From Bugula neritina (taxonomy: Eukaryota; Animalia; Bryozoa): 64,000 nucleotides of DNA. The position numbers and the translations under genes are program-made. The stretch lies in contig OZ037769.1 in the NCBI GenBank assembly GCA_964035545.1, positions 14,290,633 to 14,354,632 of the forward strand, written 5' to 3'. Below, piece by piece: positions 9,018 through 58,000 of this stretch (its first letter is position 1; each line of letters starts with the position of its first letter). Below the pieces are notes generated by a model. That model saw nothing but the letters and a program-made list of their open reading frames with translations, did not search any database and was not told the DNA's origin.

Positions 9018-9257
9018 CTGGTTTTAAACTAAATTAAGTTCACGTTCCATACTATATACTACAGTATTATTTTCACATTTTATTATTTATTCATGCGGTA
9101 TTTTTAAAAACTTAATGAGTGACCCGGTTTGTCTGTAAAAATTGACCATACATTCAAAATTTTATATAGACTAATATGATATATAGATAATATATGTATT
9201 ATATTATATGTAATTTTGTTGTATAATTTGTGTATATATGTGCTATATATATATGTG

Positions 9258-9790
<533 letters not shown>

Positions 9791-11979
9791 TACATACATA
9801 GGTATATTTTTTCTATTATATTACATATGTAATATTATATTCTGTGCTATATATTATCTTATACCATATATATATTTCTAATTATTGAATAATATATTAT
9901 GTTTGATTTTATTCCATTATATTACATTACATTATATTATTATATTGTGTTATAAAATGTTTTATTTTTTGCTAGTATCAATTTAAGCTATAAAACTGGT
10001 GAGGAAAATAGAATTCGTAAGTATTACTTGAACTAAATTTGGAGTTATTTCCTTTTTAGTAGTTTTTTTATAAATATTTTTATGCAGTCAATAAACATTC
10101 AACTAGTTTTCATGTATTATATAATTCACATTGTGGAGCTTTCCCAAATTTAATTATATTATGATGCATCAAAATGCAAATTACTAATTATTTTGTCAAA
10201 AATTAAAAATACATAGTGTATTCATTTTTTATTCTGCTGCAGGGCAAACATGAATGAATTTAAATTGATCTCTCTTTAGAGACTTTTGGGTTTTATTTCA
10301 CTTGCATTTTGTGGAACATTTCAGAAAAACCAAATACTGAAGTTATAGTCGTAATGTAATGTTGCTTAGCACAAAAAATATTCTGATAAATGGGAGTAAT
10401 CTTCTCTATCCGAGAGCTACATACAATAATTATGCAAATCGGAGTTGCTGTCTCTAATTTAAGTGGCTAAATGAAAACTGATTTACTCTCACTTACAATT
10501 GCTTCTCAACTTGTTTAATAGGGAACAATACAATGAACATTACTACATGGGTATAGCAGCACCAAATGTTTGTTTTAGTTTCAATTATTGAGAGCTAACA
10601 AAATAATGATTGTTATTTTTGAAGCGAGTCTTACAATGTTATGTACAGATAACTCTCAGCGAAGACGTCTTTGGTTAAAATAATTAATAATTTTGTAGAT
10701 CCGTACATTATGCCAAATATTGAAACTTTTGTAACCTTATTGTAAGCTTACAGTCTGCTTCCTATAATATATCAGTCTTGGTGTTTAGTAGTTATACTGT
10801 GGTTTTTCTAACCCATTGGGTAGTATTAAAAACTAAACTTTGCCATCATTAAACTCACATTAACTTAACCACCTCCAGTTTGATAAAATCTCTTTGTCTG
10901 GAAGACTGGCATATGCCTTACATAAGATGTGAGTTAATATTTAACTGAATATTACTGAACAGGTGTTTATAGTAGCCAACATTGATCCTGTTTCTCCAGG
11001 ATGTGTCCTGTGGTGGTAATCTAGACTGCAGTCTGAACTTAGCTCAATCCTGATTCATGTGATCTCATGCCAAGTCAGATCCTAGTGCTCAAGTATCAAC
11101 TAGTAATTACTCTGTTCAAAGTTACATTTTGTAATTTGTTTGTTGTTTGTTGTCCTACTGGTGTAGTAGCCAAAGTTCAAAGTGGTTGGAATGAAAATTG
11201 CGTTCAGTTCACTTAGCTTTAGATCCTAGTGCCACATAATGAAATAGGACTAAGGTTGCAACAGGTAAAACATGATTGAAGCTGTAATACAAGATCCCAG
11301 TCTTTAGCTAGTCCTCAGCTTACACTGTACAGTGGGAAAGCTGGGATTTTCCTAATGACTCATGATAACATTTTCATGTTGGCCGATTGTTAGGAAAGTA
11401 GTTTACTTATCAGAAAAATAGATTTAGCTGGGATGGCTAAACAATACAAATAAAATCTGCTTTGATATACATCCTATATCTTCGCCAATTAATTTTCAGT
11501 CTGTGGGTTAAAGCCTCTATAATATTTTATCGAATATGAAAAGCATATTTATATGCAATTTATTTCAAGTTTCACTTTAAATTGCTTGAAAAACTATAAA
11601 AGCCATTGCTGATCTCATGACCTGCATTATATGTTTAAAAGTTGATATAATCATCAGTTGTTGCTAAATAGGCTGTCTGTACATTTGATAAATGTCAAAA
11701 ATAACGTAACTTGTCCTTGATAATGTTATGTTGAAACACCAAAACAGCCTGCAGCCTACTCTCATGTACATTCAACATAAGTTCTACTAGTTGTAACTTG
11801 TCTGCATTACTCATTCAAAGAGTTGGCTTTAACTGAGAAGATGAATATTGTCAGGTGAATGCAGTAGGATGCTGTGTGTACTGTGTAGCGCCTAATGTAA
11901 ACTCAATAAAAGCTTCACAAAACAGAGCTTAACAGAAATAACGTTAAGTTATCCATGCATGACTAATTCTTTAATCGCT

Positions 11980-23627: not shown

Positions 23628-23836
23628 CAGTGGTGGTCTAGAGGTGGGAGCGCTCGCCTAATAAACACAAAGTCATGGGTTCGAATCTGACTAGGGCCAT
23701 TGGTGATGTTAGGAAGAGCATTCAGTCATAATTGCTCCTGTGCCTCATCTGAATAAGTCCTTAGCCTGCTTTAACAAAAACCCTTTCTATCAGGGGTTTC
23801 TCACTGCAGGGATGGCGACTATAAACTTACATGAGT
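23628..23836 (+). mobile_element. tRNA-derived SINE, family A, copy 1
   Basis: A-box-like TGGTCTAGAGG and B-box GGTTCGAATC, then a shared core (GCCATTGGTGATGTTAGGAAGAGCATTCAGTCATAATTGCTCC) and tail (GACTATAAACTTACATGAGT) found in four other copies in this window. Confidence 0.8.
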
Positions 23837-24403: not shown

Positions 24404-25045
24404 TGTCACAAATTCTGAGTGTACATATATCTATAGACCTACCAGGTTTTTCCTAATGATTATACAGGAATGTTCATAAATATTCTAGACTGATCAAAGA
24501 GATGGGTCATTGTTCATTGTTATTGTTTTCATTAGTCATGTTAACTACTGCCCAGCAATGTAAACAAGGTGTTGCGCAATAATTGCGAAATAACCATGGA
24601 AATTCCAATGTTTTGTTTTGTTTTGATTTTCTATAAATAGTATTGGCATGTGGGGAAGGTTTTCTACTAGAATCTTCTATACTGGAATGCTTGAGAATAT
24701 TCTAGAGTGTTTTGTTTACTATAAATACTGAGGCAGTTGTGTTTACAGTTCAGTTCATTCTCGCAGTTCCTTTTTATAAGTTCATTCTCGCAGTTCCTTT
24801 TTATAAGTTCATTCTCGCAGTTCCTTTTTATAAGTTCATTCTCGCAGTTCCTTTTTATGAGTTCATTCTTGGAGTTCATTTTAATACATTCATCTGTGCA
24901 TATCTTACTAGAGAAATAAAGTATACTTATATCCACAACTCTATTTATTCACAACTGGATTAGCAAGCTGTATACTACTTGTCTATACACTTCTGACTAC
25001 CAGACTTTTCGAACTCGTCACACTGCTACCAACAGTTTTGTGACA
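24404..25045 (+). repeat. 5' LTR (642 bp)
   Basis: Direct repeat of 28315-28956 at offset 3911; the ORF-track translations from both copies are identical. It contains TATAAAT boxes (~24632, ~24720), four 27-bp tandem units (~24753-24860) and AATAAA (~24915). Confidence 0.97.
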
Positions 25046-25047
25046 AT

Positions 25048-25065
25048 TGGGGGCTGCTCCGGGAA
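25048..25065 (+). promoter_or_regulatory. Primer-binding site, tRNA-Pro-like
   Basis: TGGGGGCTGCTCCGGGAA starts 2 nt after the LTR and matches the canonical tRNA-Pro PBS TGGGGGCTCGTCCGGGAT at 15/18 positions. Confidence 0.8.
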
Positions 25066-25141
25066 GTCTCAGTCGCACACAGGGAAGTTATTAGTTACAA
25101 CGTGAGTATACACAGGATTAATTAACAGTTGTTGAGACATT

Positions 25142-28100
25142 ATGGCGTTGTTGGAGAGAGTGACACAGATGGGCAAAGATCTTGGATTGGTGGAAGACAA
25201 GCTCATAGCTTTTGTTGAAAAAAACCTACCCATTGTTGCTGCACAAGAGGAAAAAGAAAAGGCATGGGAGGAAAAAGAAAAGGACCGAGAGGAAAAAGAA
25301 AAGGACCGAGAGGAGCGTAGATTAGAGCGTGAGGCGGAAAGGATCAAGCAAGAAAATGAGAAAGCCTTAATGGAGATGAAGATAAAAGCTGACCAGGAGG
25401 CAGAAGAGAGAAGACAACGACATGAATTAGATATGGAAAAGCTGAAAGCTAACACAAGTTTGGAGCACTCAAAACATGAAAGCACCAGGTTAGAAATAGC
25501 TAATAAACCAAAACCGAAAATACCATTCTTTGATGAGAAGGTGGACGAAATGGATAGCTATTTAGAGCGGTTCGAGTGGGTTGCCGAAGGATGTAATTGG
25601 GACAAGGGAGATTGGCCCTACCATCTCAGTCAGTACCTAAGGGGTACAGCAACAGAAGCTTACATCCGGTTGTCGCCTACCGATCGCAGAGATTATAAAA
25701 AAGTCAAAGAAGCCTTGTTGGAGCGCTTTAACTTGACTCAAGAGGGCTACAGAAAAAAGCTCAGAGAGGCAGAAGCTTACGAGGATGAAACTCCTGCCCA
25801 ACTATTCACTAGGATAGAAACTTACGTGCACAAGTGGGTGGAGCTTTCAGGGGGCATGGACATAGCCAAACTAGTGGCGACTGAACAATTTATATCATCA
25901 TGCCCAGACGACCTAGCTGTGCATTTAAAGCAAAGTTCCTACAACAGCAGTGAGGATATGTGTGATGCAGCGTCACTGTTTTTGCACGCCCGTGGAAGAA
26001 AACTAGCAAAGACTAAGAAAACTAATACAAAAAGGATGGAAAACACACCCGCCGGTAGCATGAATGCTGAACAAGGAAGTAAAAGCGATGGGGCATGCTT
26101 CATCTGCAAAGATAAGTCACACATTGCTCGTAACTGCCCACGGCGAGCCAAGAAGTACTGTTCACATTGCAAGATGAACAACCACAATACTTCAGACTGC
26201 AGAAAGTATGGTGGGAGATCAGTGCATGCTGCTGCTGCAATAGCAACTACTCAGAATAAGACTATGGTCACAGATCCAGGAATTTCATCTAAAGTGGAAG
26301 AACCTACAGAAATCACAGTTAATGGTAAAAAGTTTTTCAACACTGCTGTCTGCAAGAATGGACCTAAATTCAAAGATGGGGGCACAGCAATATTTGATGC
26401 GGAAGTTAACGGCCAACGAGCGACTGTAATGCGCGACACCGGCTGTGGTTGCATTGTAGTCAATGCAAAGTATGTGCAACCTCAACACTTAACTGGAGAA
26501 TCAGTTTATCTGAATATGGCTGATGCAAGTGTTAGGAAGGCTCAGTGGGCACTTATCTCAGTGCGCTCACCATTTTACAATGGTGTCGTCAAAGCTGCAG
26601 TAATGGACAAGACGATTTGTGACCTGCTTATTGGGAATGTGGATGGAGCAAGATCAGCTGACCAGCCACTGGAAAACTGGAAGGACTGCGCCGTAACCAC
26701 AAGAGCTCAAGCTGTCAAGGAAAAGTCAGGAGACAAACCACTGATGGTTGATTCAAATGCTAACCCATTAAGTATAGGGAAAGATGAGATAGCCAGAATG
26801 CAGAGGGATGACCCCACATTGGAACGTTTCTTCGATGCAAAAGAAGTGAAGGAGAAAAAGGGATGCACCACTAGGTTTGTGGTGAGGAATAAGATCCTGT
26901 ACCGTGAGTACACCGACTCGAAGTCTGTCAGTGTAAAACCAGTTAAACAACTCATGGTACCCAGTTCACTGAGGAAGGAAGTTCTACAGAAAGCTCATGA
27001 CTGCATAATGAGCGGACACCTAGGAGTAAAGAAAACCACTGATAGAGTGCTTTCCAACTTCTTCTGGCCAGGACTAAACGGAGATGTCGTACGTTTCTGT
27101 CAATCATGTGACATTTGCCAGAAGACGGTGAAAAAAGGCTCAGTCATGAAAGTTCCAGTACAGGAAACTCCACTAATTGACACCCCATTCAAGAGATGTG
27201 CAGTAGACCTAGTCGGACCAATTAACCCTCCGAGTGAGAAAGGACACCGCTACATCTTAACTCTAGTTGACTATGCTACAAGATATCCTGAAGCTACACC
27301 ATTGAAGAACATTGACTCAGCTACTGTAGCTGAAGCGCTGCTTGACATGTACAGTCGTGTTGGGATACCAGAGGAGGTGATAAGCGATCAAGGAACTCAA
27401 TTCATTTCGGACTACATGAAAGAGTTTACCAGATTACTTGACATGCGACAACTTCCTACCTCACCATACCATGCAATGGCCAATGGACTTGTGGAAAAGT
27501 TCAACGGAACCCTCAAGAGTATGTTAAAAAAGTTGTGTGCTAAAGAGCCAAGACAGTGGCATCGGTTCATCAATGCGGCTCTATTTGCATATAGAGAAGT
27601 CCCACAGGAATCAACAGGCTTCGCCCCATTCGAGTTACTCTATGGAAGAACTGTGCGTGGACCAATGTACATCCTGCGACAACTTTGGACAAAAGAAGAC
27701 ACTGCCGATGAAGTCAAGACCTGCTATCAACATGTTTTTGAATTGAGAGAGCGTTTAGATGACATGATGGAAATGGCACTAGCTTCGCTAAAAGACAGTC
27801 AAAAAAGATACAAACACTATTTTGATAAGAAAGCTAAGCAGAGAGACTTCAAACCTGGTGACAAAGTGCTCATTCTTCTACCTACAAATGGAAATAAATT
27901 GCTGATGCATTGGCAAGGACCATTCAATATTGAGGAGAAAGTCAGACTGAATGACTACATTATCAACATTAGAGGCAAGAGGAGAACATACCATGCCAAC
28001 ATGCTGAAGAAATACTTTGAGCGGGAGACGCCTACCGACTCTATGACTGTTGGAGCTGTGATGACTCTAGATGCTGCTGGTGCTGGAATTATTGATTACG

Positions 28101-28237
28101 ATAAGGAAAGAGAAGGCGAAGATGATTTGTTGGATCTGTACAATAAGAAACAACAGAGTGATGAGATGGGATATGTATTCACAAAACTTCAGAATCAAGG
28201 TGGAGTCAATCAAAGGAAAGGACAATGTTGGAGCTGA
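25142..28237 (+). CDS. Gag-protease-integrase polyprotein (1031 aa), lacking reverse transcriptase
   Basis: Coiled-coil N-terminus; SCAN-like capsid region (YLERFE..W..LRG.A.EAY...YKKVKEALLERF...EQF); two CCHC knuckles (CFICKDKSHIARNC, CSHCKMNNHNTSDC); aspartic protease RDTG; integrase HHCC (H-DCIMSG-H..CQSC), DDE core (VDLVG, SDQG, LVEKFN) and WQGPF. No YxDD RT motif. Confidence 0.95.
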   Translation: MALLERVTQMGKDLGLVEDKLIAFVEKNLPIVAAQEEKEKAWEEKEKDREEKEKDREERRLEREAERIKQENEKALMEMKIKADQEAEERRQRHELDMEKLKANTSLEHSKHESTRLEIANKPKPKIPFFDEKVDEMDSYLERFEWVAEGCNWDKGDWPYHLSQYLRGTATEAYIRLSPTDRRDYKKVKEALLERFNLTQEGYRKKLREAEAYEDETPAQLFTRIETYVHKWVELSGGMDIAKLVATEQFISSCPDDLAVHLKQSSYNSSEDMCDAASLFLHARGRKLAKTKKTNTKRMENTPAGSMNAEQGSKSDGACFICKDKSHIARNCPRRAKKYCSHCKMNNHNTSDCRKYGGRSVHAAAAIATTQNKTMVTDPGISSKVEEPTEITVNGKKFFNTAVCKNGPKFKDGGTAIFDAEVNGQRATVMRDTGCGCIVVNAKYVQPQHLTGESVYLNMADASVRKAQWALISVRSPFYNGVVKAAVMDKTICDLLIGNVDGARSADQPLENWKDCAVTTRAQAVKEKSGDKPLMVDSNANPLSIGKDEIARMQRDDPTLERFFDAKEVKEKKGCTTRFVVRNKILYREYTDSKSVSVKPVKQLMVPSSLRKEVLQKAHDCIMSGHLGVKKTTDRVLSNFFWPGLNGDVVRFCQSCDICQKTVKKGSVMKVPVQETPLIDTPFKRCAVDLVGPINPPSEKGHRYILTLVDYATRYPEATPLKNIDSATVAEALLDMYSRVGIPEEVISDQGTQFISDYMKEFTRLLDMRQLPTSPYHAMANGLVEKFNGTLKSMLKKLCAKEPRQWHRFINAALFAYREVPQESTGFAPFELLYGRTVRGPMYILRQLWTKEDTADEVKTCYQHVFELRERLDDMMEMALASLKDSQKRYKHYFDKKAKQRDFKPGDKVLILLPTNGNKLLMHWQGPFNIEEKVRLNDYIINIRGKRRTYHANMLKKYFERETPTDSMTVGAVMTLDAAGAGIIDYDKEREGEDDLLDLYNKKQQSDEMGYVFTKLQNQGGVNQRKGQCWS

Positions 28238-28268
28238 TTATCTAAGCCGAATTGACTCAGAATTTTAA
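28150..28268 (+). pseudogene. Out-of-frame remnant of the RNase H C-terminus
   Basis: Alternative frame NNRVMRWDMYSQNFRIKVESIKGKDNVGADYLSR matches the Gypsy RNase H end (R..RW...LQ......IKG.DN..AD.LSR). Its position after integrase gives the Gmr1 PR-IN-RT-RH order. Confidence 0.85.
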
Positions 28269-28302
28269 GTAGTTAGGAGAAATGATCAAGATAATTTCTC
28301 TT

Positions 28303-28313
28303 AGAATGGGGGG
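28303..28313 (+). promoter_or_regulatory. Polypurine tract
   Basis: AGAATGGGGGG ends 1 nt before the 3' LTR. Confidence 0.8.
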
Positions 28314-28314
28314 T

Positions 28315-28956
28315 TGTCACAAATTCTGAGTGTACATATATCTATAGACCTACCAGGTTTTTCCTAATGATTATACAGGAATGTTCATAAATATTCTAGA
28401 CTGATCAAAGAGATGGGTCATTGTTCATTGTTATTGTTTTCATTAGTCATGTTAACTACTGCCCAGCAATGTAAACAAGGTGTTGCGCAATAATTGCGAA
28501 ATAACCATGGAAATTCCAATGTTTTGTTTTGTTTTGATTTTCTATAAATAGTATTGGCATGTGGGGAAGGTTTTCTACTAGAATCTTCTATACTGGAATG
28601 CTTGAGAATATTCTAGAGTGTTTTGTTTACTATAAATACTGAGGCAGTTGTGTTTACAGTTCAGTTCATTCTCGCAGTTCCTTTTTATAAGTTCATTCTC
28701 GCAGTTCCTTTTTATAAGTTCATTCTCGCAGTTCCTTTTTATAAGTTCATTCTCGCAGTTCCTTTTTATGAGTTCATTCTTGGAGTTCATTTTAATACAT
28801 TCATCTGTGCATATCTTACTAGAGAAATAAAGTATACTTATATCCACAACTCTATTTATTCACAACTGGATTAGCAAGCTGTATACTACTTGTCTATACA
28901 CTTCTGACTACCAGACTTTTCGAACTCGTCACACTGCTACCAACAGTTTTGTGACA
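28315..28956 (+). repeat. 3' LTR (642 bp)
   Basis: Appears identical by eye to the 5' LTR; followed by TSD GTTAC. Confidence 0.97.
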
Positions 28957-31915: not shown

Positions 31916-32155
<240 letters not shown>

Positions 32156-32232
32156 GAAATTGAAAGGTTGTGTTGAAAAACTCAACATTTTAAATTCGCC
32201 AGTCCATGAATCTAGCCAACAGGCTTAGTTCT

Positions 32233-35200
32233 TCAAAATACAGCTAAAGAAAATTTACGAGCCAAGTCTGTGTAATATTGTCTCACAGCATCTACTCCTC
32301 TCTCACATACTTTAGGTAGCGGCGTTGTGAGAGCATTACAATTATATACAATAAGTACATTAAGTTGAGTTAGTCGTAATATCTTGGGACTCAAAGATGC
32401 CAAGAATTTATTTCGGGATATATCAAGGTACTGCAGACTACGCAACTTGCACACAGGATATGGTAAACTGGTGAAGTTGTTGTCAGCTATGGCGAGCCTT
32501 TCTAACTTCTTTAGATTCTGTATTCTATAAATATAATATGATAAATTGATTGTTACAAATCTCAGTGCAAACACATGGCATGCGAATGACTGAGGTGCAG
32601 TTGTAAACTCATGCAAGTATAACATAGAACAATACATATAATTTTATATTCGAAGTGAAATATATAATAATCAATCTGTTCAAATGTGAATAGCTAAGTT
32701 AAAATTCCGATGCTGGCGTTGAGAATGAAGCATTAGAAAATTTATGCAATGCCAAACCTCTAAGACTGGCTGTGATTGGTTACCCAAAGAGACACAATAA
32801 TGATTTTTGGCATATGCTTTTCTGTGAATGTATGACTAGACAAAACTGATACAATATGTTATATTCATATATTGTTACATTCCAGATATTGCTATATATT
32901 TATTCTATTAGAAACTAAAGCAAGTTTATAGTCACCATCCCTGTGAGAAACCTCTAAAAAGGGTTTTTTATGCTAGCAATTATGACTGAATGCTCTTCCT
33001 GACATCACCAGTGGCCTTTGTAGTGGTTTTAACCCATGACTTCCTGTTTACTAACCCCTAGACCACGGCTGCTCCCTATATTTAATTCTATTACTGCATA
33101 CACACCTGTTTGGTAGAGTCGACAAATTACAGCCATCCACATACAACTCTTTCAACGACAGTAGGGATGTGAATATATTGTCAAGTACACTTTCAGATAG
33201 GTTATTCCCTGATATATTCAATATCTCAAGACTCTTCAGTGAAAATAAGCTATAATATAGCATAAAGGTGTGACATGCAGTGTATAATAGTGTATTAATA
33301 TAAAATTTAATAAGTTAACCAGTTTTTAATCATATAAATAATATATTAAAGGTAAAAATGAACTGGTGAGAAAAGTAAAATGATGCGATGATTAAATATT
33401 TATATTTTTTATAAAAGTAGGAAACAGAAAAAAAAATTTCAGTTTGGTGATTTATCATTTAAATTTGTTTCTTGTCATTGGTTTGCAGCCGAAATGAGCC
33501 TGGGTCAGTACTACGTATCAACTAATAAGTGATCATGGTTTAACTAATTGCCATAGAAAGCAGGTGAACAACAAAGTCAAACACAAATATCATTATTTGG
33601 TAAACTTTGGTGTCCGATGACAACGCATTGTATACGTATGTCACTAGCATGCACATTTGCACAAGAAAATTCATCTAATGTGGGGCTGAGCTAAGGGTAC
33701 AATGTATTGATACTCATGCCATAGACATATATTGTTCTATAATAAACTATATTACTCCATAATACTCACCTGTTTGGTAAAGTTGTCAATTTACACTCTG
33801 ACACATCCAAATCTCTCAATGATAGTAAGCCTGTGAATATATTGTCAGGTAGACCTTCAGATAGGTCATTACACGATATACTCAATTCCTCAAGATTCTT
33901 CAGCAGAGATATGCTGTAATACAGGTGTGACATACAATGTACATATAATAGTACATGAATAAATGAAGTTAATTTAAACAATTTCAGAGCAGATATCAAT
34001 AAGGGAAGCTACTCAGGGTTACAAGTTTCAATAAGACAGAAAAAATACAAAGATGATATATATTACCATATAACATCTTTTACATAACCTTTGTAAAGTT
34101 TTCAAATGCATGAATAGCTATGAATGAGAGAGTGGAAAAAGTGCCATGTCAGTCGTGTGGAGAAAGAGCGTAATAGAGAGCAGAGAAGAAAGATAAGGAA
34201 GCTTATGACAATAAATTGGTACTCCTATCCAAGAGCAGAAGTGGATAGGCTGTATGTGAGCAGATGGAGACACCACACTACATAACATTCTAAAACACAA
34301 ACCCCCCAGTAAAGCATCTGAACATGAAAACAAAGGAATTGAAAGAAAAACTTTACATGCTCAGTATGAAGAGTGGAATTAATGAAACCAGTTAGAATCC
34401 ACTGAGTTGAATATCTCATTAAATTTATAAGCACTACACACCTGTTTGGTAGAGTTTTCAGTTTACAGTTTTGCATGTTCAACTCTTTCAATGATAGCAA
34501 CGATGTGAACATGTTGTCAGGTAGGGTTTCGGCGAGTTCATTACCTGATATATTCAATAGCTCCAGATTGGTCAGTGAAGATATGCTGTAACACAACATA
34601 CAGGCTGTAGATATGAAGATGAAAATAAATGCAAGATAACAGATACACTAAATTAAAATATTTGTCTCAGCTATGCATGGAGTCAAACCCTGGAAAGGAG
34701 TAGAGGTAGGTAGTACACACCTGCTTGGTAAAGTTGCCAGAATACATTCATCTATGTACAACTCTCTCAAAGATAGTAAGGATGTGAATATATTGTCAGG
34801 TAGACCTTCAGATAGGTCATTACGTGATATACTCAATATCTGAGGATTCTTCAGCAAAGATATGCTGTAATAATATACAGACATGAAATAGTCTATATTA
34901 TAATGAATCAGTAGACAAACCAGCTACCTTTAAAAATGCATATGATATTATAAACAACATGATACATATTACAATATAATTATTAAATATGGGTCCTGCT
35001 ACTTACTTGTAGTATAGTACACACTCAAAATCTTCAATTTTGAGCTTTTTTCACAATTTACCTTCCCGTGTATATGGTTTTTGCTCAAAAAAATAAAATA
35101 TCAAAAAAAAAACAACTCAAAACTGGAGGTCTTTTTAATTTTCCTGGATTTCCCATGGCTTTTCCTAATTAGTTAGTTTTGATTTTCGGACATCATGGAA

Positions 35201-37917
35201 AAACCGTGACGGTCCACAAATCCTAACTAACCAGATAATTAGAAAAAACCATGAGAAATTTAACAAAAATAAAAAGAACATTGATTATTTAGCTGTTTTT
35301 ATTTCAATTTTCGTTAGTTTAGACTTTAGAGCAAAAACCCTTTTCACTGGCAGCTGAGCTGTGAAAAAAGCTCAAATCTGAATTTATCGAGTGTGTACTA
35401 TATCAAGTAAAATGACCCACATTACAATATATAATTCACACCTGCTTGGTAAGGTTGCCAGCCCACATTTATCCAGGAACAAATCTGTCAATGATAGTAA
35501 GCCTGTGAATATATTGTCAGGTAGACCTTCAGATAGGTTATTATTTGATATCATCAATGCCTCAAGATTCCTCAGTAGAGACACGCTGTAACACAACATG
35601 CAAATGTGAAAGAGCCTATATTATAATGAAGCAGTAAACAAACTAGTTTTATTAAATAACATAACATAAATAATATAGAATACATTACATAATATAAATA
35701 ATAGTTTAAACACTCTGATCACTAATCTCATGATGTATAATTCACACCTGCTTGGTATAGTTACCAGCCCACAATCATACATGCTCATATCTCTCAATGA
35801 TATTAAGCCTGCGAATATATTGTCTGGTAGACCTTTAGATAGGTTATTATGTGACATACTCAGTGCCTCAAGATTCTTCAGTGAAGATATGCTGTAACAT
35901 AAACATACAAATATGAAATAGTAAGAATAATATCATAACGAAACAGAAAACAAACCAGTTTTATTAAATAATAAATGATATAATATGAACAACATATCAG
36001 ATTATCTCATATGAGCAATACATTATATAATATTCTAATATAAATAATTATTAAATACTTCAATATATAATTCACACCTGCTTGGTAAAGTTACCAGCCC
36101 GCATTCATTCATGTACAACTCTCTCAATGATAGTAATCCTGTGAATATACTGTCTGGTAAACATAGGTCATTATGTGATATATTCAATAGCTCAAGATTA
36201 TTCAGTGAAGATATGCTGCAACATAACAGGTATGAAATTGTTAACAAATACACACCTGCTAGATAAAATGTCAGTCTATTTTTGCATTAATAACTCCTTA
36301 AATGATAATACAGATAAGAATATATGATCAGGTAGACCTTCAGAAAAGTCATTTCTGATACATCCAAAACCTCCAAATTTCTTAGTAGAGACACGGCATA
36401 CATACAAGGTGAGCATCATGTATAATAATGCTACAGTTTACTAACACTGGTTAGCTACAGTACACCTGCTACTCAGTGTCATAGAGTAAATCCACTGTAC
36501 CGACACTGGGTAGCTACAGCACACCTGCTACTTAGTGTCACACAGCTATTATCAATAAATACAACATACTGACACTTTCACCCCACAAGTTGAGTCAGTC
36601 ACTTTTAAGAAGTACATGTAATTCAATTCAACAATATAGTACACACCTGCTAGGTAGAGCTGACAAACTACAGAGCGTCAAGTCCAGTTTCCTTAATGAC
36701 AGTAGAGATGCGAATACATTGTCAGGAAAATATTTGGGCAACTTCTTAAATAGCAGAGAATTGAGGATAGTGTTGGGAAAATTTTCGGGTGACCAATCAT
36801 AAGTAAAACTTAATACCTCAAGACTGCTCATTGAGGATATACTGTAAAATAAAACATTTTTGCATTATTTTGTTATAATATATTGTTTTACATCAATACA
36901 CATATTTGGCTTGTTTTGGTGTATTTTCTTGTGCATAAGTCTTGCCTTACATATATATGAAGAGCATGTTTTTACAGTTAAAGAAGAGTATGCCAACTGG
37001 TTGCTGTATATTAGCAGACACAAATAGTCAACAACTCTGTAGATATTTTGCCCTTTCGGTGATTATCTGAACTCCAAATTATAACCTTACACTATACCTA
37101 GTAAAGTCAGCATCATTGATTGCACCATAAACTGACAGATCTGTGACATGAGGAAATATCATAGCAATGTTTGGAGGATTGCTCTCTCCCATTATTATGT
37201 GGGTAACTTTATGTTGTGAATTTATATCATTAGTCTCTTCTATAGCAACGCATGGAGTAAAATTCTCTACCGTTCTATCAGTTTCTCCATCTGTACTAGA
37301 TGTGTTGAACCACACTCTGTGCTTCTCTACAACAGGAAGTAGTGACTATGAATCCAAATATTAATAGTACAGTTAAAGTCGATTACAAAGGAAGCAGCCC
37401 TGGCCTAGGGGTTAGAGTGTTTGCATAGTAAGCACGGGGTCATGAGTTCGAGCTGACAAAAGCCATTGGTGATGTTAGGAAGAGTATCCAGTCATAATTG
37501 CTCCTGTGTCACATTTGAATATCTCCTTAGCGCGATTTAATAGAAAACCTTTCCATCAGGGGTTTTTCACAGAGATAGCGACTACAAACTTGCGTGAGTT
37601 TTACGATTACTTACCAGTAGATACACTGTACTCTCACTGATAGTTCATACATCACACTGACAAAGTGTAGATATCTACTGATTAGTGATTATATACCACA
37701 CAAGTATCTTAAGTTTATACAGAAGAAAGCTCTGCCATAACTACAACTCACTCAATATTTTTCATATTTACTGCTTTCTTATTAAATCTGCTAGAGGTGC
37801 ACTTAGATATATTCCTTAACTACTGGTCAGAAAGTTTATAATTCACTAACTTGGAGCTGGCGGAGTTGGAAGTTCAGTTTGAGATAAAGTTGAATGGGAA
37901 GTTTGAGTCTGATCCAT
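32233..37917 (-). CDS. Cytoplasmic leucine-rich-repeat protein (~594 aa if all intact exons are joined) built from tandem two-LRR cassette exons; ROCO/MFHAS1-type C-terminal cap
   Basis: Exons (minus strand): 37917-37851 (MDQTQTSH..), 37326-37098, 36841-36647, 36215-36078, 35891-35748, 35585-35442, 34864-34721, 34585-34442, 33913-33770, 33249-33106, 32524-32233. The total is 1785 nt, in frame. LxxLxxLxISxN / LxSLxxLxxxxC repeats; ends LTTPLPKVCERGVDAVRQYY; no signal peptide or TM segment. Confidence 0.85.
32921..33076 (-). mobile_element. tRNA-derived SINE family A copy (internally deleted), in an LRR-gene intron
   Basis: Reverse complement matches the head, core and tail of the 23628 copy. 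Confidence 0.75.
35015..35400. mobile_element. MITE-like foldback element with TA flanks (Tc1/mariner-pogo type), in an LRR-gene intron
   Basis: Termini TAGTACACACTC / GAGTGTGTACTA are flanked by TA; long imperfect inverted arms (TTTGAGCTTTTTTCACA / TGTGAAAAAAGCTCAAA, TTTTGCTC / GAGCAAAA). Confidence 0.7.
36256..36395 (-). pseudogene. Dead LRR cassette exon (pseudoexon)
   Basis: Homologous to neighbouring cassettes (VSLLRNLEVLDVS / NDFSEGLPDHIFLSVLSFKEL.. SR|GTGTGT) but lacks the AG acceptor and has a frameshift and an in-frame TAG. Confidence 0.8.
37390..37600 (+). mobile_element. tRNA-derived SINE family A copy, in LRR-gene intron
   Basis: TGGCCTAGGGG A-box, GAGTTCGAG B-box, shared core and tail. 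Confidence 0.8.
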
Positions 37918-39544
37918 TCTTCAGTCACTGAATATGCTTGCCAGTCTTACCTAATAACCTTAACTCTAATCCATATAATCTGTAACAGTAATTACAGTCA
38001 GTGCAATTATTATTAAGACTAGATATACAAAATATAAAATAATATATCATATACTCTTTTAGTTAAGCAACAAGTGTGACAGTGACAGTTTTCTCTATGT
38101 TCTTTCCGCAGGATTGAAATGTAATTAATATAATGTTAGTTGAACATTACATTTACCTAGAAAATATCGCACCCAAATAACAGAAACCTCTGTTAAAACT
38201 AAAACAGATTCTGCATAAAAAATATACAATCAAAGATCAAGTTACATGCCTACATATTCCAATAATAATAATAGAAGGGGTAAATCTACTAATATTCTTA
38301 TTACCGCAGTCATAGTGGCAAAAAACTTTTTGAGCAGAAAATTATTGTTCCACAGCAACTCCAAGTATTAATTTCATTATTATCTATTTGCATGCCCAGT
38401 CTTACTCAGTGACTCACAGTCAACTTGTTGTACGAAATCAGAATTTTAGTGTCTAACTGAAACATAATATTTATTACACTAGTGATACTGCAAGTGTTAT
38501 GACTAATCACTAATGACTCACTATAAGTCTATACTTCTAACTGCAGAAGTAGAAGTTTTACCATATTATAATTATTATAAATATATCGTGAAATCACATG
38601 CATAAAATAAACATGAAATTGAATAGATGTTTCAATTCAATATTTGTTTTAAAATAAAAATTGATACCAAAGTCCAAAAATAAACTAAAACCTAATTATT
38701 AATTAATAAATTTTTATTTTATGCATTTACTGATTTACCTCTACTAGTACTTGTAGACGTAGTAGTAGTCTAGTACTACTACTAGTACTACTACTAGTAG
38801 TACTACTAGTAGTACTACTAGTAGTGTAGTAGTAGTACTAGTAGTACTACTATTAGTTTTACCACTGAGTATTACAGTTACAGTAATAAATAATTATAAA
38901 TCAGTGTTATGGTTAGTAACTTTCCTTTATATATCTAAAGTTAAATGCAAAATCTAATGCATTTAGTCTTACACTTAGACTCACATACCATGCTGGTGCC
39001 ACTGAAAAGAAATTTAACTGGAGCTCCACGTGAAATGGAATCAATAGAATATTATTTGGTTCGAATCATTCCCGCTTAATTTGCAATTTCCGGCCTTGCA
39101 AAGCCAATGGGCTGCGTTTCTTGAAAAGCTGCCCATTGCTATCACAGTAGGCTCCCTCAATAACAGAAGGAATGCAACTCTCAAATATTACATTATAATT
39201 CAACAAAACTTTGTTCAAAATCAGTTTTTAAATTGAAATTTATAATTTAGGAAAAAAAGTCAACAAAAGTTATAGCTGTCTTACCCAATATTGTAATTTG
39301 AATATATATCTGTGTTTTTATAGATATTCTTTAGTGACAATTTGACAATTTAAGTTGAAAGTGGTCCGTTTCAATTTGGAGCTATTCCGCAGCATTTCGT
39401 AGCATTTTGCAAAGCTCGTGACTCTTAGGTGACCCCTAGAGTCACAATTGAGTACTCTGGCTTGAGTTTACACACCTTCTAAACATGCTTTAGTAGAAAC
39501 ATGAGTTTCTGCTACTGCCAAGGTGTGAGCCATGGTATTCTGTT

Positions 39545-39590
39545 TTGTGCTGATGAGGGGACAAACCCGGAAACAGCTGCTATCCACAGA
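39545..39590 (+). ncRNA. Type I hammerhead ribozyme, degenerate copy
   Basis: Same architecture, but with an AUC triplet (39584) that creates a stem III mismatch, and a CCCG stem II 3' arm. Confidence 0.6.
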
Positions 39591-39819
39591 TTGAGATATT
39601 ACGCTCTCATTTAATGCTCAGCAATGACATTAAATGATTGAGCACTCTCACCATGGTCACAAACTCAAGCTGCTAGCATTTTGCAATGCTCGTGACTCCT
39701 AGGAGACTCCTAGAGTCACTTGAGCACTCTGGCTTGAGTTTACACACTTTTTAAATTAATATGCTTTAGTAAAACTATAAGTTTCTACTATTGCGAAGGT
39801 GTGGGCCATGGTACTCTGT

Positions 39820-39866
39820 TCTGTGCTGATGAGGGGACAAATCCCGAAACAGCTGCTGTCCACAGA
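39820..39866 (+). ncRNA. Type I hammerhead ribozyme, apparently intact
   Basis: Stem I UCUGUG/CACAGA; core CUGAUGA; stem II GGGG/UCCC with ACAAA loop; GAAA; stem III ACAG/CUGU; GUC cleavage triplet ending at 39860. Confidence 0.85.
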
Positions 39867-39868
39867 TT

Positions 39869-40082
<214 letters not shown>

Positions 40083-41413
40083 CCCTGCACGCTTGATTAG
40101 GTATATCTAAAACTCCATGAAATAATCAATTGCTGTACTGATAAGCTGCAGTTAGATTTTCTGTATATAAACAAAACCTATTACAGTTAAACCAGGCCAA
40201 TGCCTGCACACTTGAGTTGTATGGCTTTCAATAACCAACTTCAATTTAACATCAGTTAACAATACAGCTTTCAAAATCGCTATTTATATAGCAACCAGGC
40301 AGCACTATAGCTTCAGGTCAATCAACTATTCAAACAATGCTGTTTGTTTTATTCCCTAAAACTTGAAAGGTGAGAATCTAATGCTATAAAGTTTAGAAAT
40401 ATTAAGTTGGCTACTAGTCTAAGTAAAACTGCTGATTTTCAACAAGAAATATTGTTATTGAATGAGAATATAACGCTGTAGTGTAAAGCAGAAAGTTGCA
40501 TTTACAACGAAGAAAACTAACTTTCATATTAAAAATAACTTCTCGATTGAATAGTGAAACAATCAGAGTTGGAGTGAGTAATAATCATTTAACAACATGG
40601 CAACAGACTATCTCTCAAGAATGTATTGGCCACAACGAGGTCCTGAAACAACCAGAGAAAAGTTGTAAGTTATGCTATTAAATTGTTACAGGCTATCATA
40701 TCATATATGAAATATTGTACTATTAGTTTTGGTATTTGATACTATCAATACTAAATTATAGTTGTGCTTTCAGCAAGCTATATTTTCCTTTTTGGCTTAA
40801 TGACCGCAACTTGACTAAGAATTCAGTTATATGCTGGTTTAAAAATATATTTCGTTAGCTTTTTAAAACAATAAACTTTCTAGATTGTTCTAAAATATAT
40901 AATTACACATCTTTCAATCTAATGAAATAATATGGTTGCAATTATAAAGCAATAATTAATAGTACTTTTAAATTTTTAATCATATATTCAATTGAATGAA
41001 ATACTTTCATAATTGCCTAAAGTTGCTGTTTCTGTGAAAACCCATCATGTGGTGAGGATTTTCGAATGATGCATCAAAATAGCACAGACCACTTTTAACT
41101 GGGTGACCTTCCTAAGAGGTAGATGCAGCAATGGAGAAATTGAGAAAAGCCTGTGTTCTAGATTAGAAATGTAGCACAAGAAGTTATGTTCTCACAAGAA
41201 TTTCAACGGAGGGGGGTATGTGAGGGGCAAGCCATAATTTTATAATAAGATTAAAGAGCTTAGGCTATCTCAATTTCTCCACTACTGCACTTTATAAATG
41301 CTTCCTGGGGTCTCCTATATATGGGACTCAGTCACATTAGACTACTTCCTGTGTATTTATTGAATTATGGGTAATATTTTGCCGCCAGCACTACTTATGG
41401 AAAGACAATTGGA

Positions 41414-54221
<12,808 letters not shown>

Positions 54222-55036: not shown

Positions 55037-58000
55037 TTACATAGCAGGTAGAAGGTATTCTCTCTGTTCATACAATTCACATCCTTTGAATGCATTATAA
55101 ACAGGTTTTCCCACTGATTCCTTCAAGTTAATTTTGATTAAACTAGCCCACATGAACCTTGAAACTTCTTCCTGCAACATTAGAGCACACACATTCTAGT
55201 CTACATCTCTCAGTCTATAATATCCGCAACATACGATATGTTCTATATTTCTCGGTATGTAATGTATGTATAATACACAAGTTATTCTAAATTTCTGATC
55301 AGCCTATCATATTTGTAATAGACATTATAAGTTCTATATACTTTTTAGGCACAGTATTACTTATTTAAATATTTAATATAATCATATCAGACTATAATAT
55401 GTCCTATATTGAAATATATACTTTATATTATATTATATATAACATATGCTATATTGAAACATTAAGAATATATTAAAATAATATAAAGAAAATTATATCT
55501 AAACCTACTGGTTGATTATCAAAGCAGTTTGGGTAAAGTATTTTAATTCCACTAATCAGGCCGTTACACTTCATCGAGCAGGTTTTCCCGTTAATTGTGT
55601 CACAGACTTGTAAAATTTCCTTCTCACGAAGTTGCACTGTTGAAAGCAATTTATCTAGGTCACACCCAGGTGCAATTGCTGCAAACAAAAAATAAATATT
55701 CATATAAAAAGTTTTTACTACTAAATATTTAACATGTTAATAAAGTCCATAGTTGATACTAAAACTGGAAAAAATTTTATATTGATCCCTATTATTTTTT
55801 ATATTCTAAGAGATTACGTATAAAGCACTATATATAATATAATGTATAGTGTAACATTTAATATATAAACACAAAATACGATGAATTAAATTTGGTAATT
55901 TCAAGCTATTATATATATTATATTGTGATATAATGTAGAATCTAACACAAAGTATATATAAAATCATTATTGCATATAGAAAATCATATATAGCTTAGTG
56001 TAGCACACAATTTGCAATATCTAATTAATGTATTGTGCAAAATGATTGTTAACATTTTGTTATAACTTTTTGAAGAATGATGAAAAATACTTTTAATCTT
56101 TTATTAATATCCAAAAGGCAAAATAAACTTTTAAGCAACTTCTTCAAAAGGAAATGAATAATAATAATAAAATTAGAATATTAAGAAAGTTTGCAAAAAA
56201 TAGTGAGGGTTATTCTGAAAATGTTAAGTTCTTCAACAAAACTTTTAATATTTAGTTAAAAAGAATTACAAGTTTCTATAGAGAAATTTAAAACTGATAA
56301 TCTACAATATTCATTTTTTCATTCTGCTCAATTTTTGAACTCTAAGTTTGTCAAGTGCTGTTCCCCTTTCAATAATTCAATGCACACTATTTATTGCCAC
56401 ATCTCCCGTTTCGTAGCAACCAATAAATAACTTACTCGCAATGTCATTGCCGCATCTGCCTTTTACAGAAAAACAGTTGTCCACTTTGAAGAGGTTGGCT
56501 GGATAATACGATATCAGTGTTACACACATCTCATCCTAAACAAGATTCAACAGTCTATATGAATAATTTTGTTCATGTATCCAACACATCAAATGCTCTC
56601 TATTGACATGTTATATTATCAATAAGTTGAAATACAAGCTTCCATTCTTTAGAATTATTAGCTGACCAAGCTATAAACATGGTGCATTATTATAGTGGCC
56701 TACTGTGAAAATTTAGATTTTTTTTTCAAAATTGCATAAAAAGAGACCAATTACTTAAACTGGTAGAGCTAGGCTATCTACTAAGTGATGAGTTGGAAAT
56801 GTCAAGAAAAACAATAATTACTCATGTGCTACTTTGAAAGCCCCAAACCATGTTATCAGCTTGGTGGTAGGACGGTCCTGGGCCGCCTTAAAAACAGCTG
56901 GACTTTCACAGGGCTGGAGGCTATAAGCAAATATGACTTCAAAGTTGCTTTGATTGGAAGAAGTCATTATATTATATATTAGAAACTAAAATGGCCGTTC
57001 ACCTTCTAAATTTTAAACTGTAATTAAGCTAATATGGTACTTTGACATATTCAACTTTAAAAACAAATGAGTATATGCTAATTTATTTTTGAAGTTGAAT
57101 ATGTCAAAGTACCATATTATAGCTTAACTTTACAAACACTCCTTTTAGACACTCACATGTGTTCCCGGCCCATTGATTACCCAGTCTTCATTCCCTTCTG
57201 TGCTGAAAGTGCATTCAATCTCCAGTTCATCACCTGAAGAAGACAAAGCATTTAAAAGCATTTCTTTCAACAGGTTAATAGATTAACTGCGTTAGTTGTA
57301 AAAATATCATATTATAAATTTTTAGAATGTAAGGAAAGCAGCCTATCACACTGACTGAGTGGCTGCGTGATTTTATTTATACATATAATGTATGATATAT
57401 GCATATATATGCATGTATATATTTATATATAGATGTGTGTATTATAAGTTTTGTATGTTGAAATTCCTTTGTATACTGTATATTATAATTGGTTAATGTT
57501 TCAGTGCATTACTTTAGTGGACTATTATTACAGTTTTAGGCTTCTGTTGTATTCTTCACTGCTGGCCAGCTGCTGTACAAAATCACCCAGGGTACCTGTT
57601 GAATAATTTTGAACAATGCTGGATTTAATTAGCAGGTCTTCTATGTAAAACATATCAATTTTATTTGAGACTGCTACTTGATGCAATTAATTATGACAGT
57701 ACTTAGAATTCGTACCTTTGTCACTTAGCATCTTAATATTATCAAGCATCGGTGGTTCAGTGGTAGAATTCTCGCCTGCCACGCGGGAGGCCCGGGTTCA
57801 ATTCCCGGCCGATGCATTTTTTTTCGTAATCAAGTTCAACAACCTGCACGGCCACTACTAAATGAGCGAGCATATTTTACTCAAATTTTGTAAAATAACG
57901 AGTCTGACTTGCATAAAAGCTACAACCAATTTTTTAAATTTTGTTAATTGGTTTAGATTTAAGTTAAATTACTCACCAGGCTCAAAGACAACAGGTTCAT

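What the first reader, a model, noticed from the sequence alone, without database searches (positions are those of the whole stretch)
33106..36841. Array of interchangeable, surface-hypervariable two-LRR cassette exons: a candidate invertebrate receptor-diversification system
Seen: eight intact cassette exons (six of exactly 144 nt, one 138 nt, one 195 nt) plus one dead copy. All are phase 2-2, so any subset splices in frame. The 144-nt exons encode a 25+23-aa LRR pair (xxN-type then xxC-type). Scaffold residues (GLPDNIFT.LLSL, TLP.R) are nearly invariant, while the non-consensus beta-strand positions differ in every cassette (ELLNISH, EALSMSH, EALMISN, QILSISR, ELLNISG, EELSISC, EILNISG; ELYMNE, DMSMYD, DLFLDK, ELYIDE, ELNMQN, DLDVSE, ELYVDG). 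Most donors are the suboptimal AG|GTGTG. Established: the concave LRR face binds ligand in VLRs and NLRs, and brown-algal ROCO genes diversify by shuffling symmetric LRR exons. Inference: combinatorial skipping and/or exon shuffling under diversifying selection could generate a repertoire of intracellular sensors.
Basis: partly seen in the sequence, partly recalled or inferred. Interest (0 to 1): 0.8.

Follow-up and report, generated by a model that had tools for sequence, protein, structure and literature searches.

The report
LRR-only remnant of ROCO-caspase receptor family
Eight look-alike exons, each coding two leucine-rich repeats with a fast-changing binding face, form the sensor arm of a gene from a family of over 100 GTPase-caspase genes in a probable moss animal (bryozoan), but this copy has lost the GTPase and caspase half, and nothing yet shows that cells mix the exons.

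Summary
On the minus strand lie eight intact phase-2/2 exons (195, 138 and 6 x 144 nt) and one dead copy. The array is the LRR arm of a member of a very large LRR-Roc-COR(-caspase) family. This 216-Mb genome has at least 75 Roc-COR exons and 117 LRR-cap exons, and the nearest named protein is a bryozoan MFHAS1 homolog.

Family-wide I extracted 98 clean 144-nt cassettes from 20 genes:
- Cassette number varies from 2 to 9 per gene.
- Between genes, cassettes are 3.4 times more alike at synonymous sites than the Roc-COR exons, which indicates exchange between genes.
- Concave-face codons show dN/dS of about 2.0 (95% interval 1.3-3.2) and change twice as fast as flanking introns. Scaffold codons show about 0.47.

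This supports germline exon duplication or shuffling under diversifying selection, a parallel to brown-algal ROCO genes.

What is specific to this window: homology to paralogs stops at about 32259, right after the LRR cap, and no Roc-COR or caspase lies anywhere in the 64 kb. It is an old, divergent, LRR-only copy whose ten exons are all still open.

The scan has already found this family several times on other DNA of this genome.

The parts
37098..37326 (-). Family-typical exon preceding the cassettes. It has no Pfam hit, and its 3' part reads as an irregular first LRR. Its donor is phase 2. The start codon and 5' exons were not found.
   Evidence: It is open only in one frame. 43 homologous exons occur in the same genome, the nearest at 52% aa identity. 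Pfam gave nothing.
36647..36841 (-). First cassette, 195 nt. It is a two-LRR unit with a 17-aa insertion in the first repeat.
   Evidence: (nhmmer matches model positions 47-144)
36434..36545 (-). Two 53-nt direct repeats carrying donor-like AGCAG|GTGT remnants of decayed cassette ends, inside the intron.
   Evidence: family D8; sequence read
36256..36395 (-). Dead cassette copy. It is 140 nt, has lost the AG acceptor, is frameshifted and has an in-frame stop. It is 68-77% identical to the live cassettes.
36078..36215 (-). Cassette of 138 nt, with a two-codon deletion in the loop of the first LRR.
35748..35891 (-). 144-nt two-LRR cassette exon
35442..35585 (-). 144-nt two-LRR cassette exon
35013..35402 (.). 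Inverted repeat with 95-nt arms (77% complementary), resembling a small transposon insertion, in the intron between two cassettes.
   Evidence: I1
34721..34864 (-). 144-nt two-LRR cassette exon
34442..34585 (-). 144-nt two-LRR cassette exon. It does not group with its neighbours in the cassette tree.
33770..33913 (-). 144-nt two-LRR cassette exon, the only one with a GTGAGT donor.
33106..33249 (-). 144-nt two-LRR cassette exon, last of the array.
32975..33077 (.). Copy of a dispersed SINE-like repeat in the last intron. Other copies lie at 37380-37620, 23634-23836 and 42059-42222.
32233..32524 (-). Terminal exon holding the last LRRs and the LRR cap. Homology to paralogs ends at about 32259, after '...YYTDLA'. 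Eight unrelated codons and a TGA follow. In paralogs the same exon runs on for about 590 codons into Roc-COR.

Best explanation
The array is the ligand-binding (LRR) arm of a 3'-truncated member of a very large, lineage-specific LRR-Roc-COR(-caspase) gene family in what is probably a bryozoan.

Each 144-nt phase-2 exon encodes one two-repeat building block of the LRR solenoid.

The diversity is made in the germline in three ways: tandem duplication of an exon-plus-intron unit, exchange or conversion of cassettes between paralogs, and positive selection on the x5, x7, x8 and x10 positions of the LxxLxLxx(N/C)xL strands.

The exons are most simply read as constitutively spliced, giving one LRR horseshoe per gene.

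In full-length paralogs this sensor arm would control a Roc-COR GTPase switch and a caspase encoded just downstream. That is inferred from domain order and was not assayed.

The window's copy ends right after the LRR cap, so at best it encodes an LRR-only protein. It is an old, divergent lineage that stayed under purifying selection until recently. Whether the LRR-only form is still functional (for example as a decoy or regulator) or has just started to decay is open, at about even odds.
For: Shown:
- Exon anatomy.
- LRR Pfam hits.
- Paralog L034 has the same upstream exon, then cassettes, then one 702-aa open frame that runs from the LRR cap into Roc. Roc (PF08477) scores 30.7 bits against a cut-off of 27. 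Caspase (PF00656) exons lie on the same strand downstream. JGI contigs L056 and L057 show the same arrangement.
- 75 scored Roc-COR exons, nearly all open over 675-753 aa.
- 117 LRR-cap exons, of which about 98 continue into long frames and about 19 are short or broken.
- The window has no Roc-COR or caspase. Homology stops at about 32259, and the tail beyond it is single copy.
- 98 clean cassettes in 20 genes, 2-9 per gene.
- dN/dS is 2.0 (bootstrap 1.32-3.23) at concave positions defined beforehand and 0.47 elsewhere. Within the window's own cassettes the values are 1.76 and 0.49.
- Concave codons changed at 6.1%, flanking introns at 3.1% and the rest of the exon at 1.4%.
- Synonymous distance between genes is 0.088 for cassettes and 0.298 for Roc-COR, in 97% of 153 gene pairs.
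- The window's cap exon has dS of 0.44-0.88 to intact genes with dN/dS of 0.43.
- Absence of any stop in 1686 coding nt rejects more than 3.9% neutral divergence at P<0.05.
- A Watersipora MFHAS1 homolog has 141-nt phase-2 cassettes, a large cap-Roc-COR exon and an adjacent caspase gene.
Against: - No RNA evidence of any kind exists for this locus, so transcription, the exon joins and constitutive splicing are all inferred.
- The start codon and 5' exons were not found.
- Synonymous differences are also raised at the hypervariable codons (0.152 against 0.080). Part of the dN/dS excess could therefore reflect multiple hits or patchy conversion. The intron baseline (p=0.008) rests on only 10 pairs.
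- Low synonymous distance between cassettes of different genes could partly reflect constraint on synonymous sites rather than exchange.
- COR (PF16095) was not reported for L034 itself, only for more distant homologs.
- Fusion of the caspase into the same protein was not verified here.
Confidence: 0.72

Rival explanations
1. The cassettes are alternatively and combinatorially skipped, so that one gene yields many LRR surfaces: a somatic or regulated repertoire.
For: All cassettes are symmetric in phase and any subset stays in frame. Brown-algal ROCO genes with one-LRR exons do show splice variants with different LRR content (PMC11378527). LRR solenoids tolerate different repeat numbers, as the 2-9 cassettes per paralog show.
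Against: Donors are CAG|GTGTGT, one mismatch from consensus and the family-wide standard. No conserved intronic docking or selector pairs were found. The observed diversity is fully accounted for by germline differences between cassettes and genes.
Confidence: 0.1
2. The locus is simply a dead gene fragment: a partial duplicate that never had, or long ago lost, its function. Its regularity is only inherited.
For: It has no Roc-COR or caspase. No start codon or 5' exon was identified. About 19 of 117 cap exons in the genome are likewise truncated or broken. Repeat insertions and a dead cassette lie in its introns. In brown algae a third to a half of ROCO loci are pseudogenes (PMC3341825, PMC11378527).
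Against: All ten exons are open and all splice dinucleotides are canonical. More than 3.9% neutral divergence is rejected. Yet the lineage is old (dS of at least 0.44) with dN/dS of 0.43, lower than between intact genes at 0.64. Scaffold codons of its own cassettes show dN/dS of about 0.5 after their duplication. The one unselected copy in the array shows what decay looks like.
Confidence: 0.3
3. The truncation is an assembly artefact, and the gene really continues into a Roc-COR exon.
For: A long (TA)n tract at 31919-32155 lies about 100 bp beyond the breakpoint and could confuse an assembler.
Against: The break in homology is at about 32259, within unique sequence and not at the microsatellite. 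The 107-bp tail is single copy in the genome. Other loci show similar LRR-only ends.
Confidence: 0.05

Closest known systems
Brown-algal LRR-ROCO genes with shuffled LRR exons (Zambounis et al. 2012, PMC3341825; Teng et al. 2024, PMC11378527)
   Same: Both have LRR-Roc-COR architecture. LRR units sit in separate symmetric exons of fixed length. Exon number varies between paralogs. Positive selection acts on concave-face positions. Many copies are truncated or pseudogenised. Both are proposed immune receptors.
   Different: Here the organism is an animal (probably a bryozoan). The unit is two LRRs (144 or 141 nt), not one (72 nt). The family is larger: at least 75 scored Roc-COR exons against the 9-47 genes reported per brown alga. 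Caspase exons follow Roc-COR. Alternative splicing is documented in Ectocarpus and untested here. Common descent of the exon architecture is unlikely, so the likeness is probably convergent.
MFHAS1 / MASL1 (animal LRR-Roc-COR ROCO protein)
   Same: The domain order is the same. The Watersipora gene has the same phase-2 two-LRR cassette exons, and a caspase gene lies 121 bp downstream.
   Different: Vertebrates have a single MFHAS1 gene without a known cassette-diversified LRR arm. Here there is a family of more than 100 genes. The window's own copy lacks Roc-COR altogether.
NLR / NLRP LRR domains encoded by tandem symmetric exons (own knowledge, not tested here)
   Same: LRR units are encoded by same-length, same-phase exons, so that exon skipping keeps the frame. 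The LRR acts as the sensor arm of an NTPase switch.
   Different: The switch differs (NACHT ATPase against Roc-COR GTPase), the LRR class differs (28-29-aa RI-like against 23-25-aa), and there is no homology beyond the LRR fold.
Lamprey VLR and insect Dscam diversification
   Same: The idea of building many binding surfaces from arrays of similar cassettes.
   Different: VLR cassettes are non-spliced donor segments copied somatically into an incomplete gene. Dscam uses mutually exclusive exon clusters guided by docking and selector RNA pairing. Here the cassettes are ordinary exons with their own splice sites, several are needed at once to form a solenoid, and no docking or selector pattern was found.

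Membership tests
Leucine-rich repeat domain | Tandem LxxLxLxx(N/C)xL repeats recognised by LRR profile models | tested here: met
   LRR_1, LRR_8, LRR_4 and LRR_14 hit the cassettes and the terminal exon. The consensus comes from 98 cassettes.
ROCO proteins (window's own gene) | Roc GTPase domain followed by COR in the same protein | tested here: not met
   tblastn of a paralog's 702-aa cap-Roc-COR frame against the whole window matches only aa 16-116, at 32559-32257. DNA homology ends at about 32259. The gene is a derivative of a ROCO gene, not a ROCO protein.
ROCO proteins (the gene family the window's exons belong to) | Roc domain | tested here: met
   PF08477 scores 30.7 bits against a cut-off of 27 in L034. 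PF08477 is precomputed for most database relatives.
ROCO proteins (the gene family) | COR domain after Roc | tested here: inconclusive
   PF16095 was not listed for L034, but it is listed for homologs at 38-42% identity, P0032, P0034, P0035 and P0039. About 400 conserved residues follow Roc in all paralogs.
ROCO-caspase fusion (family) | Caspase (Peptidase_C14) encoded in the same transcript as Roc-COR | not testable with these tools
   Caspase exons lie on the same strand 0.7-3 kb downstream in L034, L056 and L057, and 121 bp downstream in Watersipora, where NCBI calls a separate gene. No RNA was available to show the join. There is none in the window.
Exon-shuffled LRR receptor system (brown-algal ROCO type) | LRR units in symmetric exons of fixed length | tested here: met
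   95 or more of the cassettes are exactly 144 nt, AG..GT, phase 2/2.
Exon-shuffled LRR receptor system (brown-algal ROCO type) | Cassette number and order differ between paralogs, with exchange between genes | tested here: met
   There are 2-9 cassettes per gene. The tree is interleaved. Synonymous distance is 0.088 for cassettes against 0.298 for Roc-COR. The window's own array shows no recent duplication: each of its cassettes is 20 or more differences from any other cassette.
Exon-shuffled LRR receptor system (brown-algal ROCO type) | Diversifying selection on concave-face residues | tested here: met
   dN/dS is 2.0 (1.32-3.23) against 0.47. Divergence is twice that of introns, p=0.008. 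This used a counting method on sister pairs, not a codon-model likelihood test.
Exon-shuffled LRR receptor system (brown-algal ROCO type) | Alternative splicing of LRR exons | not testable with these tools
No transcript contigs were found.
Dscam-type mutually exclusive splicing | Conserved docking site and selector sequences pairing across the exon cluster | tested here: not met
   Only one short inverted pair was found (26 nt, 81%; 33653-33678 with 36915-36940), plus a transposon-like inverted repeat. There is no per-exon selector series.

The most novel reading that the evidence does not exclude
The eight symmetric cassettes are skipped in many combinations, in this LRR-only gene and its full-length paralogs. 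An animal without antibodies would then make a somatic repertoire of LRR surfaces on top of its germline family of more than 100 genes. The LRR-only products would act as soluble decoys or regulators of the Roc-COR-caspase receptors.
Probability: 0.08. Interest if true: 0.9.

Novelty: new variant of a known kind. Interest (0 to 1): 0.55.

Why it matters
LRR receptors diversified by exon shuffling and tied to a Roc-COR switch are so far described only in brown algae. There they were proposed as a route to receptor diversity, and 9-47 genes per species was called the largest ROCO repertoire known (PMC11378527).

This animal genome holds more than twice that number. It uses a two-LRR exon module that another bryozoan, Watersipora, also has, and caspase exons lie next to the switch. 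That points to a one-piece sensor-switch-executioner receptor family, a candidate for immunity or for self/non-self recognition in a colonial animal.

The window adds a specific point: the family also sheds LRR-only copies that stay open for a long time. This is the raw material for decoys, as seen with truncated plant and animal immune receptors.

The claim that would make it exceptional, combinatorial splicing, remains open and is directly testable with long-read cDNA.

Tried and rejected
2. Independent assemblies of this locus. The search for related loci on metagenome contigs with the gene-specific upstream exon found none. An exact look-up of the terminal-exon ORF found none. The contigs found through P0009 are DNA, not transcripts.
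3. Fetching more paralog flanks.
I used 26 sister pairs instead and did no reconstruction of my own.
5. A segment upstream of the first known exon (41100-41300), shared with two paralog loci, looked like a family promoter or 5' exon. It is a dispersed repeat with 2231 candidates genome-wide. Rejected.
6. A short ATG-to-GT mini-exon within that repeat would fit phase 1 but is not conserved. Rejected.
7. 'The window and the C7 paralog L054 share one truncation event.' Rejected, because their breakpoints differ by three codons, their tails are unrelated, and L054 runs into a SINE. The window's cap exon is also closer to full-length C1 genes (71%) than to L054 (58%).
8. 'Suboptimal donors imply skipping.' Rejected, because this donor is the family standard.
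9. The spliced protein was neither searched nor folded.
10. The big representative-protein search, structure prediction and complex prediction were not used, because nothing in the claim depended on them.


Full report
**1. Observation**

Reading the minus strand of 32000-37600 and locating donors and acceptors by script gives eight exons:
- 36841-36647 (195 nt)
- 36215-36078 (138 nt)
- 35891-35748, 35585-35442, 34864-34721, 34585-34442, 33913-33770 and 33249-33106 (144 nt each)

Each exon is bounded by AG and GT and is open in a single frame. Each starts with one base that completes a codon and ends with two bases, so all introns are phase 2. All lengths are multiples of three, so any subset is in frame. 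Every junction codon is AG+C or AG+T, which reads Ser.

A ninth copy at 36395-36256 is dead: it has no AG acceptor, is 140 nt long and has an in-frame stop. Two 53-nt repeats at 36434-36545 carry donor-like remnants. Pfam LRR models hit the cassettes and the terminal exon.

**2. What the gene is**

The window is eukaryotic and AT-rich (about 32% G+C).

The cassette is not private to this gene. A search of the window's own 216-Mb assembly gave 170 candidates, of which 40 were scored, at 82-86% identity. They cluster on contig 1 at 32.5-35 Mb and at several places on contig 5.

A paralog 0.4 Mb away (L034) shows the full architecture:
- the same upstream exon
- four 144-nt cassettes
- one 702-aa open frame that begins with the last LRRs and the LRR cap and runs into a P-loop GTPase, matching Roc (PF08477) at 30.7 bits against a cut-off of 27
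- caspase (PF00656) exons on the same strand downstream

The Roc-COR part has 113 candidates in the genome. 75 were scored and nearly all are open over 675-753 aa.

The LRR-cap exon has 117 matches. About 98 continue into long frames, and about 19 sit in short or broken frames.

The nearest named protein is 'malignant fibrous histiocytoma-amplified sequence 1 homolog' of the bryozoan Watersipora subatra, at 33% identity. Closer unnamed proteins come from JGI metagenome contigs, which carry the same Roc-then-caspase order.

The Watersipora gene itself has two 141-nt phase-2 two-LRR cassette exons, a large cap-Roc-COR exon and a caspase gene 121 bp downstream. The module is therefore older than this genome's expansion. 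I infer that the organism is a bryozoan. Earlier notes of the scan name Bugula, which I did not test.

**3. What is special about this window**

A tblastn of the paralog's 702-aa frame against all 64 kb matches only its first about 100 residues, at 32559-32257.

At DNA level the homology stops at about 32259, just after the codons for '...YYTDLA'. Eight unrelated codons and a TGA at 32233 follow. The 107-bp tail is single copy in the genome. It lies about 100 bp before a (TA)n tract, so the break is not at the repeat. No caspase-like sequence is in the window. The gene is an LRR-only derivative.

The paralog with the most similar upstream exon (L054, contig 7) is also LRR-only. It breaks three codons earlier and runs into a SINE-like repeat. 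The window's cap exon is closer to full-length genes (71%) than to L054 (58%). The two truncations are therefore independent.

I could not find the start codon or any 5' exon. No convincing open frame lies upstream. A shared upstream segment turned out to be a dispersed repeat with over 2000 candidates.

**4. Is this copy alive?**

The lineage is old. Its cap exon has dS of 0.44-0.88 to 18 intact genes, against a median of 0.23 among intact genes. Its dN/dS is 0.43, lower than the 0.64 seen between intact genes.

The upstream exon gives dN/dS of 0.55-0.77.

Its ten exons hold 1686 in-frame coding bases, and 4.5% of possible substitutions in them would create a stop. The absence of any stop therefore rejects more than 3.9% neutral divergence at P<0.05. 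The dead cassette inside the array, 68-77% identical to the live ones, shows what neutral decay looks like.

The copy was thus under purifying selection until recently. I cannot tell whether the truncation is recent or the LRR-only form is itself selected.

**5. How the diversity arises**

With an nhmmer profile I extracted 98 clean 144-nt cassettes (AG..GT, open) from 20 genes, at 2-9 per gene. Some arrays are perfect tandem units of about 275 bp, which shows duplication of an exon-plus-intron unit.

In the maximum-likelihood tree, cassettes of different genes and chromosomes interleave. Four of the window's six 144-nt cassettes form a clade with long branches, and two sit elsewhere with weak or long-branch support.

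Across 153 gene pairs the synonymous distance of cassettes (median 0.088) is 3.4 times lower than that of the Roc-COR exons of the same genes (0.298). It is lower in 97% of pairs. This is the signature of exchange or conversion between genes, or in part of constraint on synonymous sites.

Ancestral reconstruction was not available, so I compared 26 phylogenetically independent sister pairs:
- At the concave-face positions defined beforehand (x2, x3, x5, x7, x8, x10 of each LxxLxLxx(N/C)xL), dN/dS is 2.0. The bootstrap 95% interval is 1.32-3.23, and none of 2000 replicates is at or below 1.
- At all other codons dN/dS is 0.47.
- Within the window's own cassettes the values are 1.76 and 0.49.

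The hottest codons are 14, 38, 39, 36, 41, 43, 11 and 16 of the cassette.

In ten recent pairs with alignable introns, the concave codons differ at 6.1%, the flanking introns at 3.1% (Fisher p=0.008) and the rest of the exon at 1.4%.

Caveats:
- These are counting methods on short sequences.
- Synonymous differences are also raised in the hot codons (0.152 against 0.080).
- Conversion blurs the tree.

**6. Splicing**

No transcript contigs were found by other routes.

From sequence alone nothing favours regulated skipping. The donor CAG|GTGTGT has one mismatch to the metazoan consensus and is the donor of 75 of 95 family cassettes. Acceptors have ordinary pyrimidine tracts. The only inverted pairs are a transposon-like repeat within one intron and one 26-nt, 81% match that is probably chance.

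Skipping remains possible and has a precedent in Ectocarpus ROCO genes (PMC11378527).

I left out the step of joining them into a spliced protein for searches or folding.

**7. Comparison and novelty**

The closest known system is the brown-algal LRR-ROCO family (PMC3341825; PMC11378527). It has one-LRR 72-nt symmetric exons, shuffling, positive selection on four concave positions, many pseudogenes, splice variants and 9-47 genes per species, described as the most of any organism.

The present family shares all the features I could test. It differs in these ways:
- It is in an animal.
- Its module is two LRRs.
- It has more than 75 genes.
- Caspase exons lie beside the switch.

My literature searches found no description of it.

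This scan has already met the family several times on other DNA of this genome, with the same conclusions (truncated members). My results were obtained independently of those notes and agree with them.

For this window the verdict is a real, well-described cassette array. It belongs to a new animal variant of a known kind of receptor-diversification system, in a copy that has lost its signalling half. The splicing hypothesis remains untested.

Noticed in passing
window 24404-28956: LTR retroelement. A 1031-aa open frame (25142-28237, +) has gag-like, zinc-knuckle, protease-like and integrase-like parts. Flanking direct repeats contain identical 89-aa ORFs (24667-24936 and 28578-28847), which suggests a recent insertion. 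No reverse-transcriptase-sized segment was obvious in the translation.
   Followed up: no
window 37380-37620, 23634-23836, 42059-42222, 32975-33077; L054 2186-2394: A SINE-like dispersed repeat of about 200 bp (67-84% identity between copies). One copy sits exactly where the LRR-only paralog on contig 7 loses homology to the family. ARAGORN finds no tRNA in the copies within 32800-37700.
   Followed up: partly
window 41100-41300: Dispersed repeat of about 170 bp with 2231 first-look candidates in the genome at 79-84% identity. It also lies upstream of two paralogs, which at first made it look like a family promoter element.
   Followed up: yes
window 39400-40100: Another reader noted tandem hammerhead ribozymes at 39400-39875. 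An Rfam scan of the whole window at gathering thresholds reports only one tRNA (57746-57816, +) and no hammerhead. The more permissive threshold was not tried.
   Followed up: partly
window 4297-9017 (+): Exons of a cysteine-rich ectodomain followed by a 307-aa open frame with seven hydrophobic segments (8094-9017), which looks like a 7TM receptor gene on the plus strand. A very long (TA)n tract follows at about 9100-9880.
   Followed up: no
window 48883-49095 (+) and 50609-53656 (+): An exon that reads like part of a cyclic-nucleotide-binding domain, with further plus-strand exons and a tandem peptide repeat ([11 protein letters not shown]) at about 50750-51050.
   Followed up: no
window 33653-33678 and 36915-36940: A 26-nt inverted pair (81% complementary). 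One arm is in the intron before the first cassette and the other in the intron before the last. It would bracket seven cassettes if it paired in RNA, but it is probably chance in AT-rich sequence.
   Followed up: no
L059 (Watersipora subatra OY755165.1, 4587795-4614301): The MFHAS1-homolog gene has a 14-kb intron between its second cassette and the cap-Roc-COR exon. NCBI calls the caspase 121 bp downstream a separate gene, so the ROCO-caspase linkage may be mis-split there or truly separate.
   Followed up: partly
own genome, one search list: About 19 of 117 LRR-cap exons sit in short or broken frames (for example C1:33923792, C6:3526434, C6:3624313, C6:3874393, C7:8034248, C3:4062345). LRR-only or broken derivatives are therefore a recurrent by-product of the family.
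   Followed up: partly
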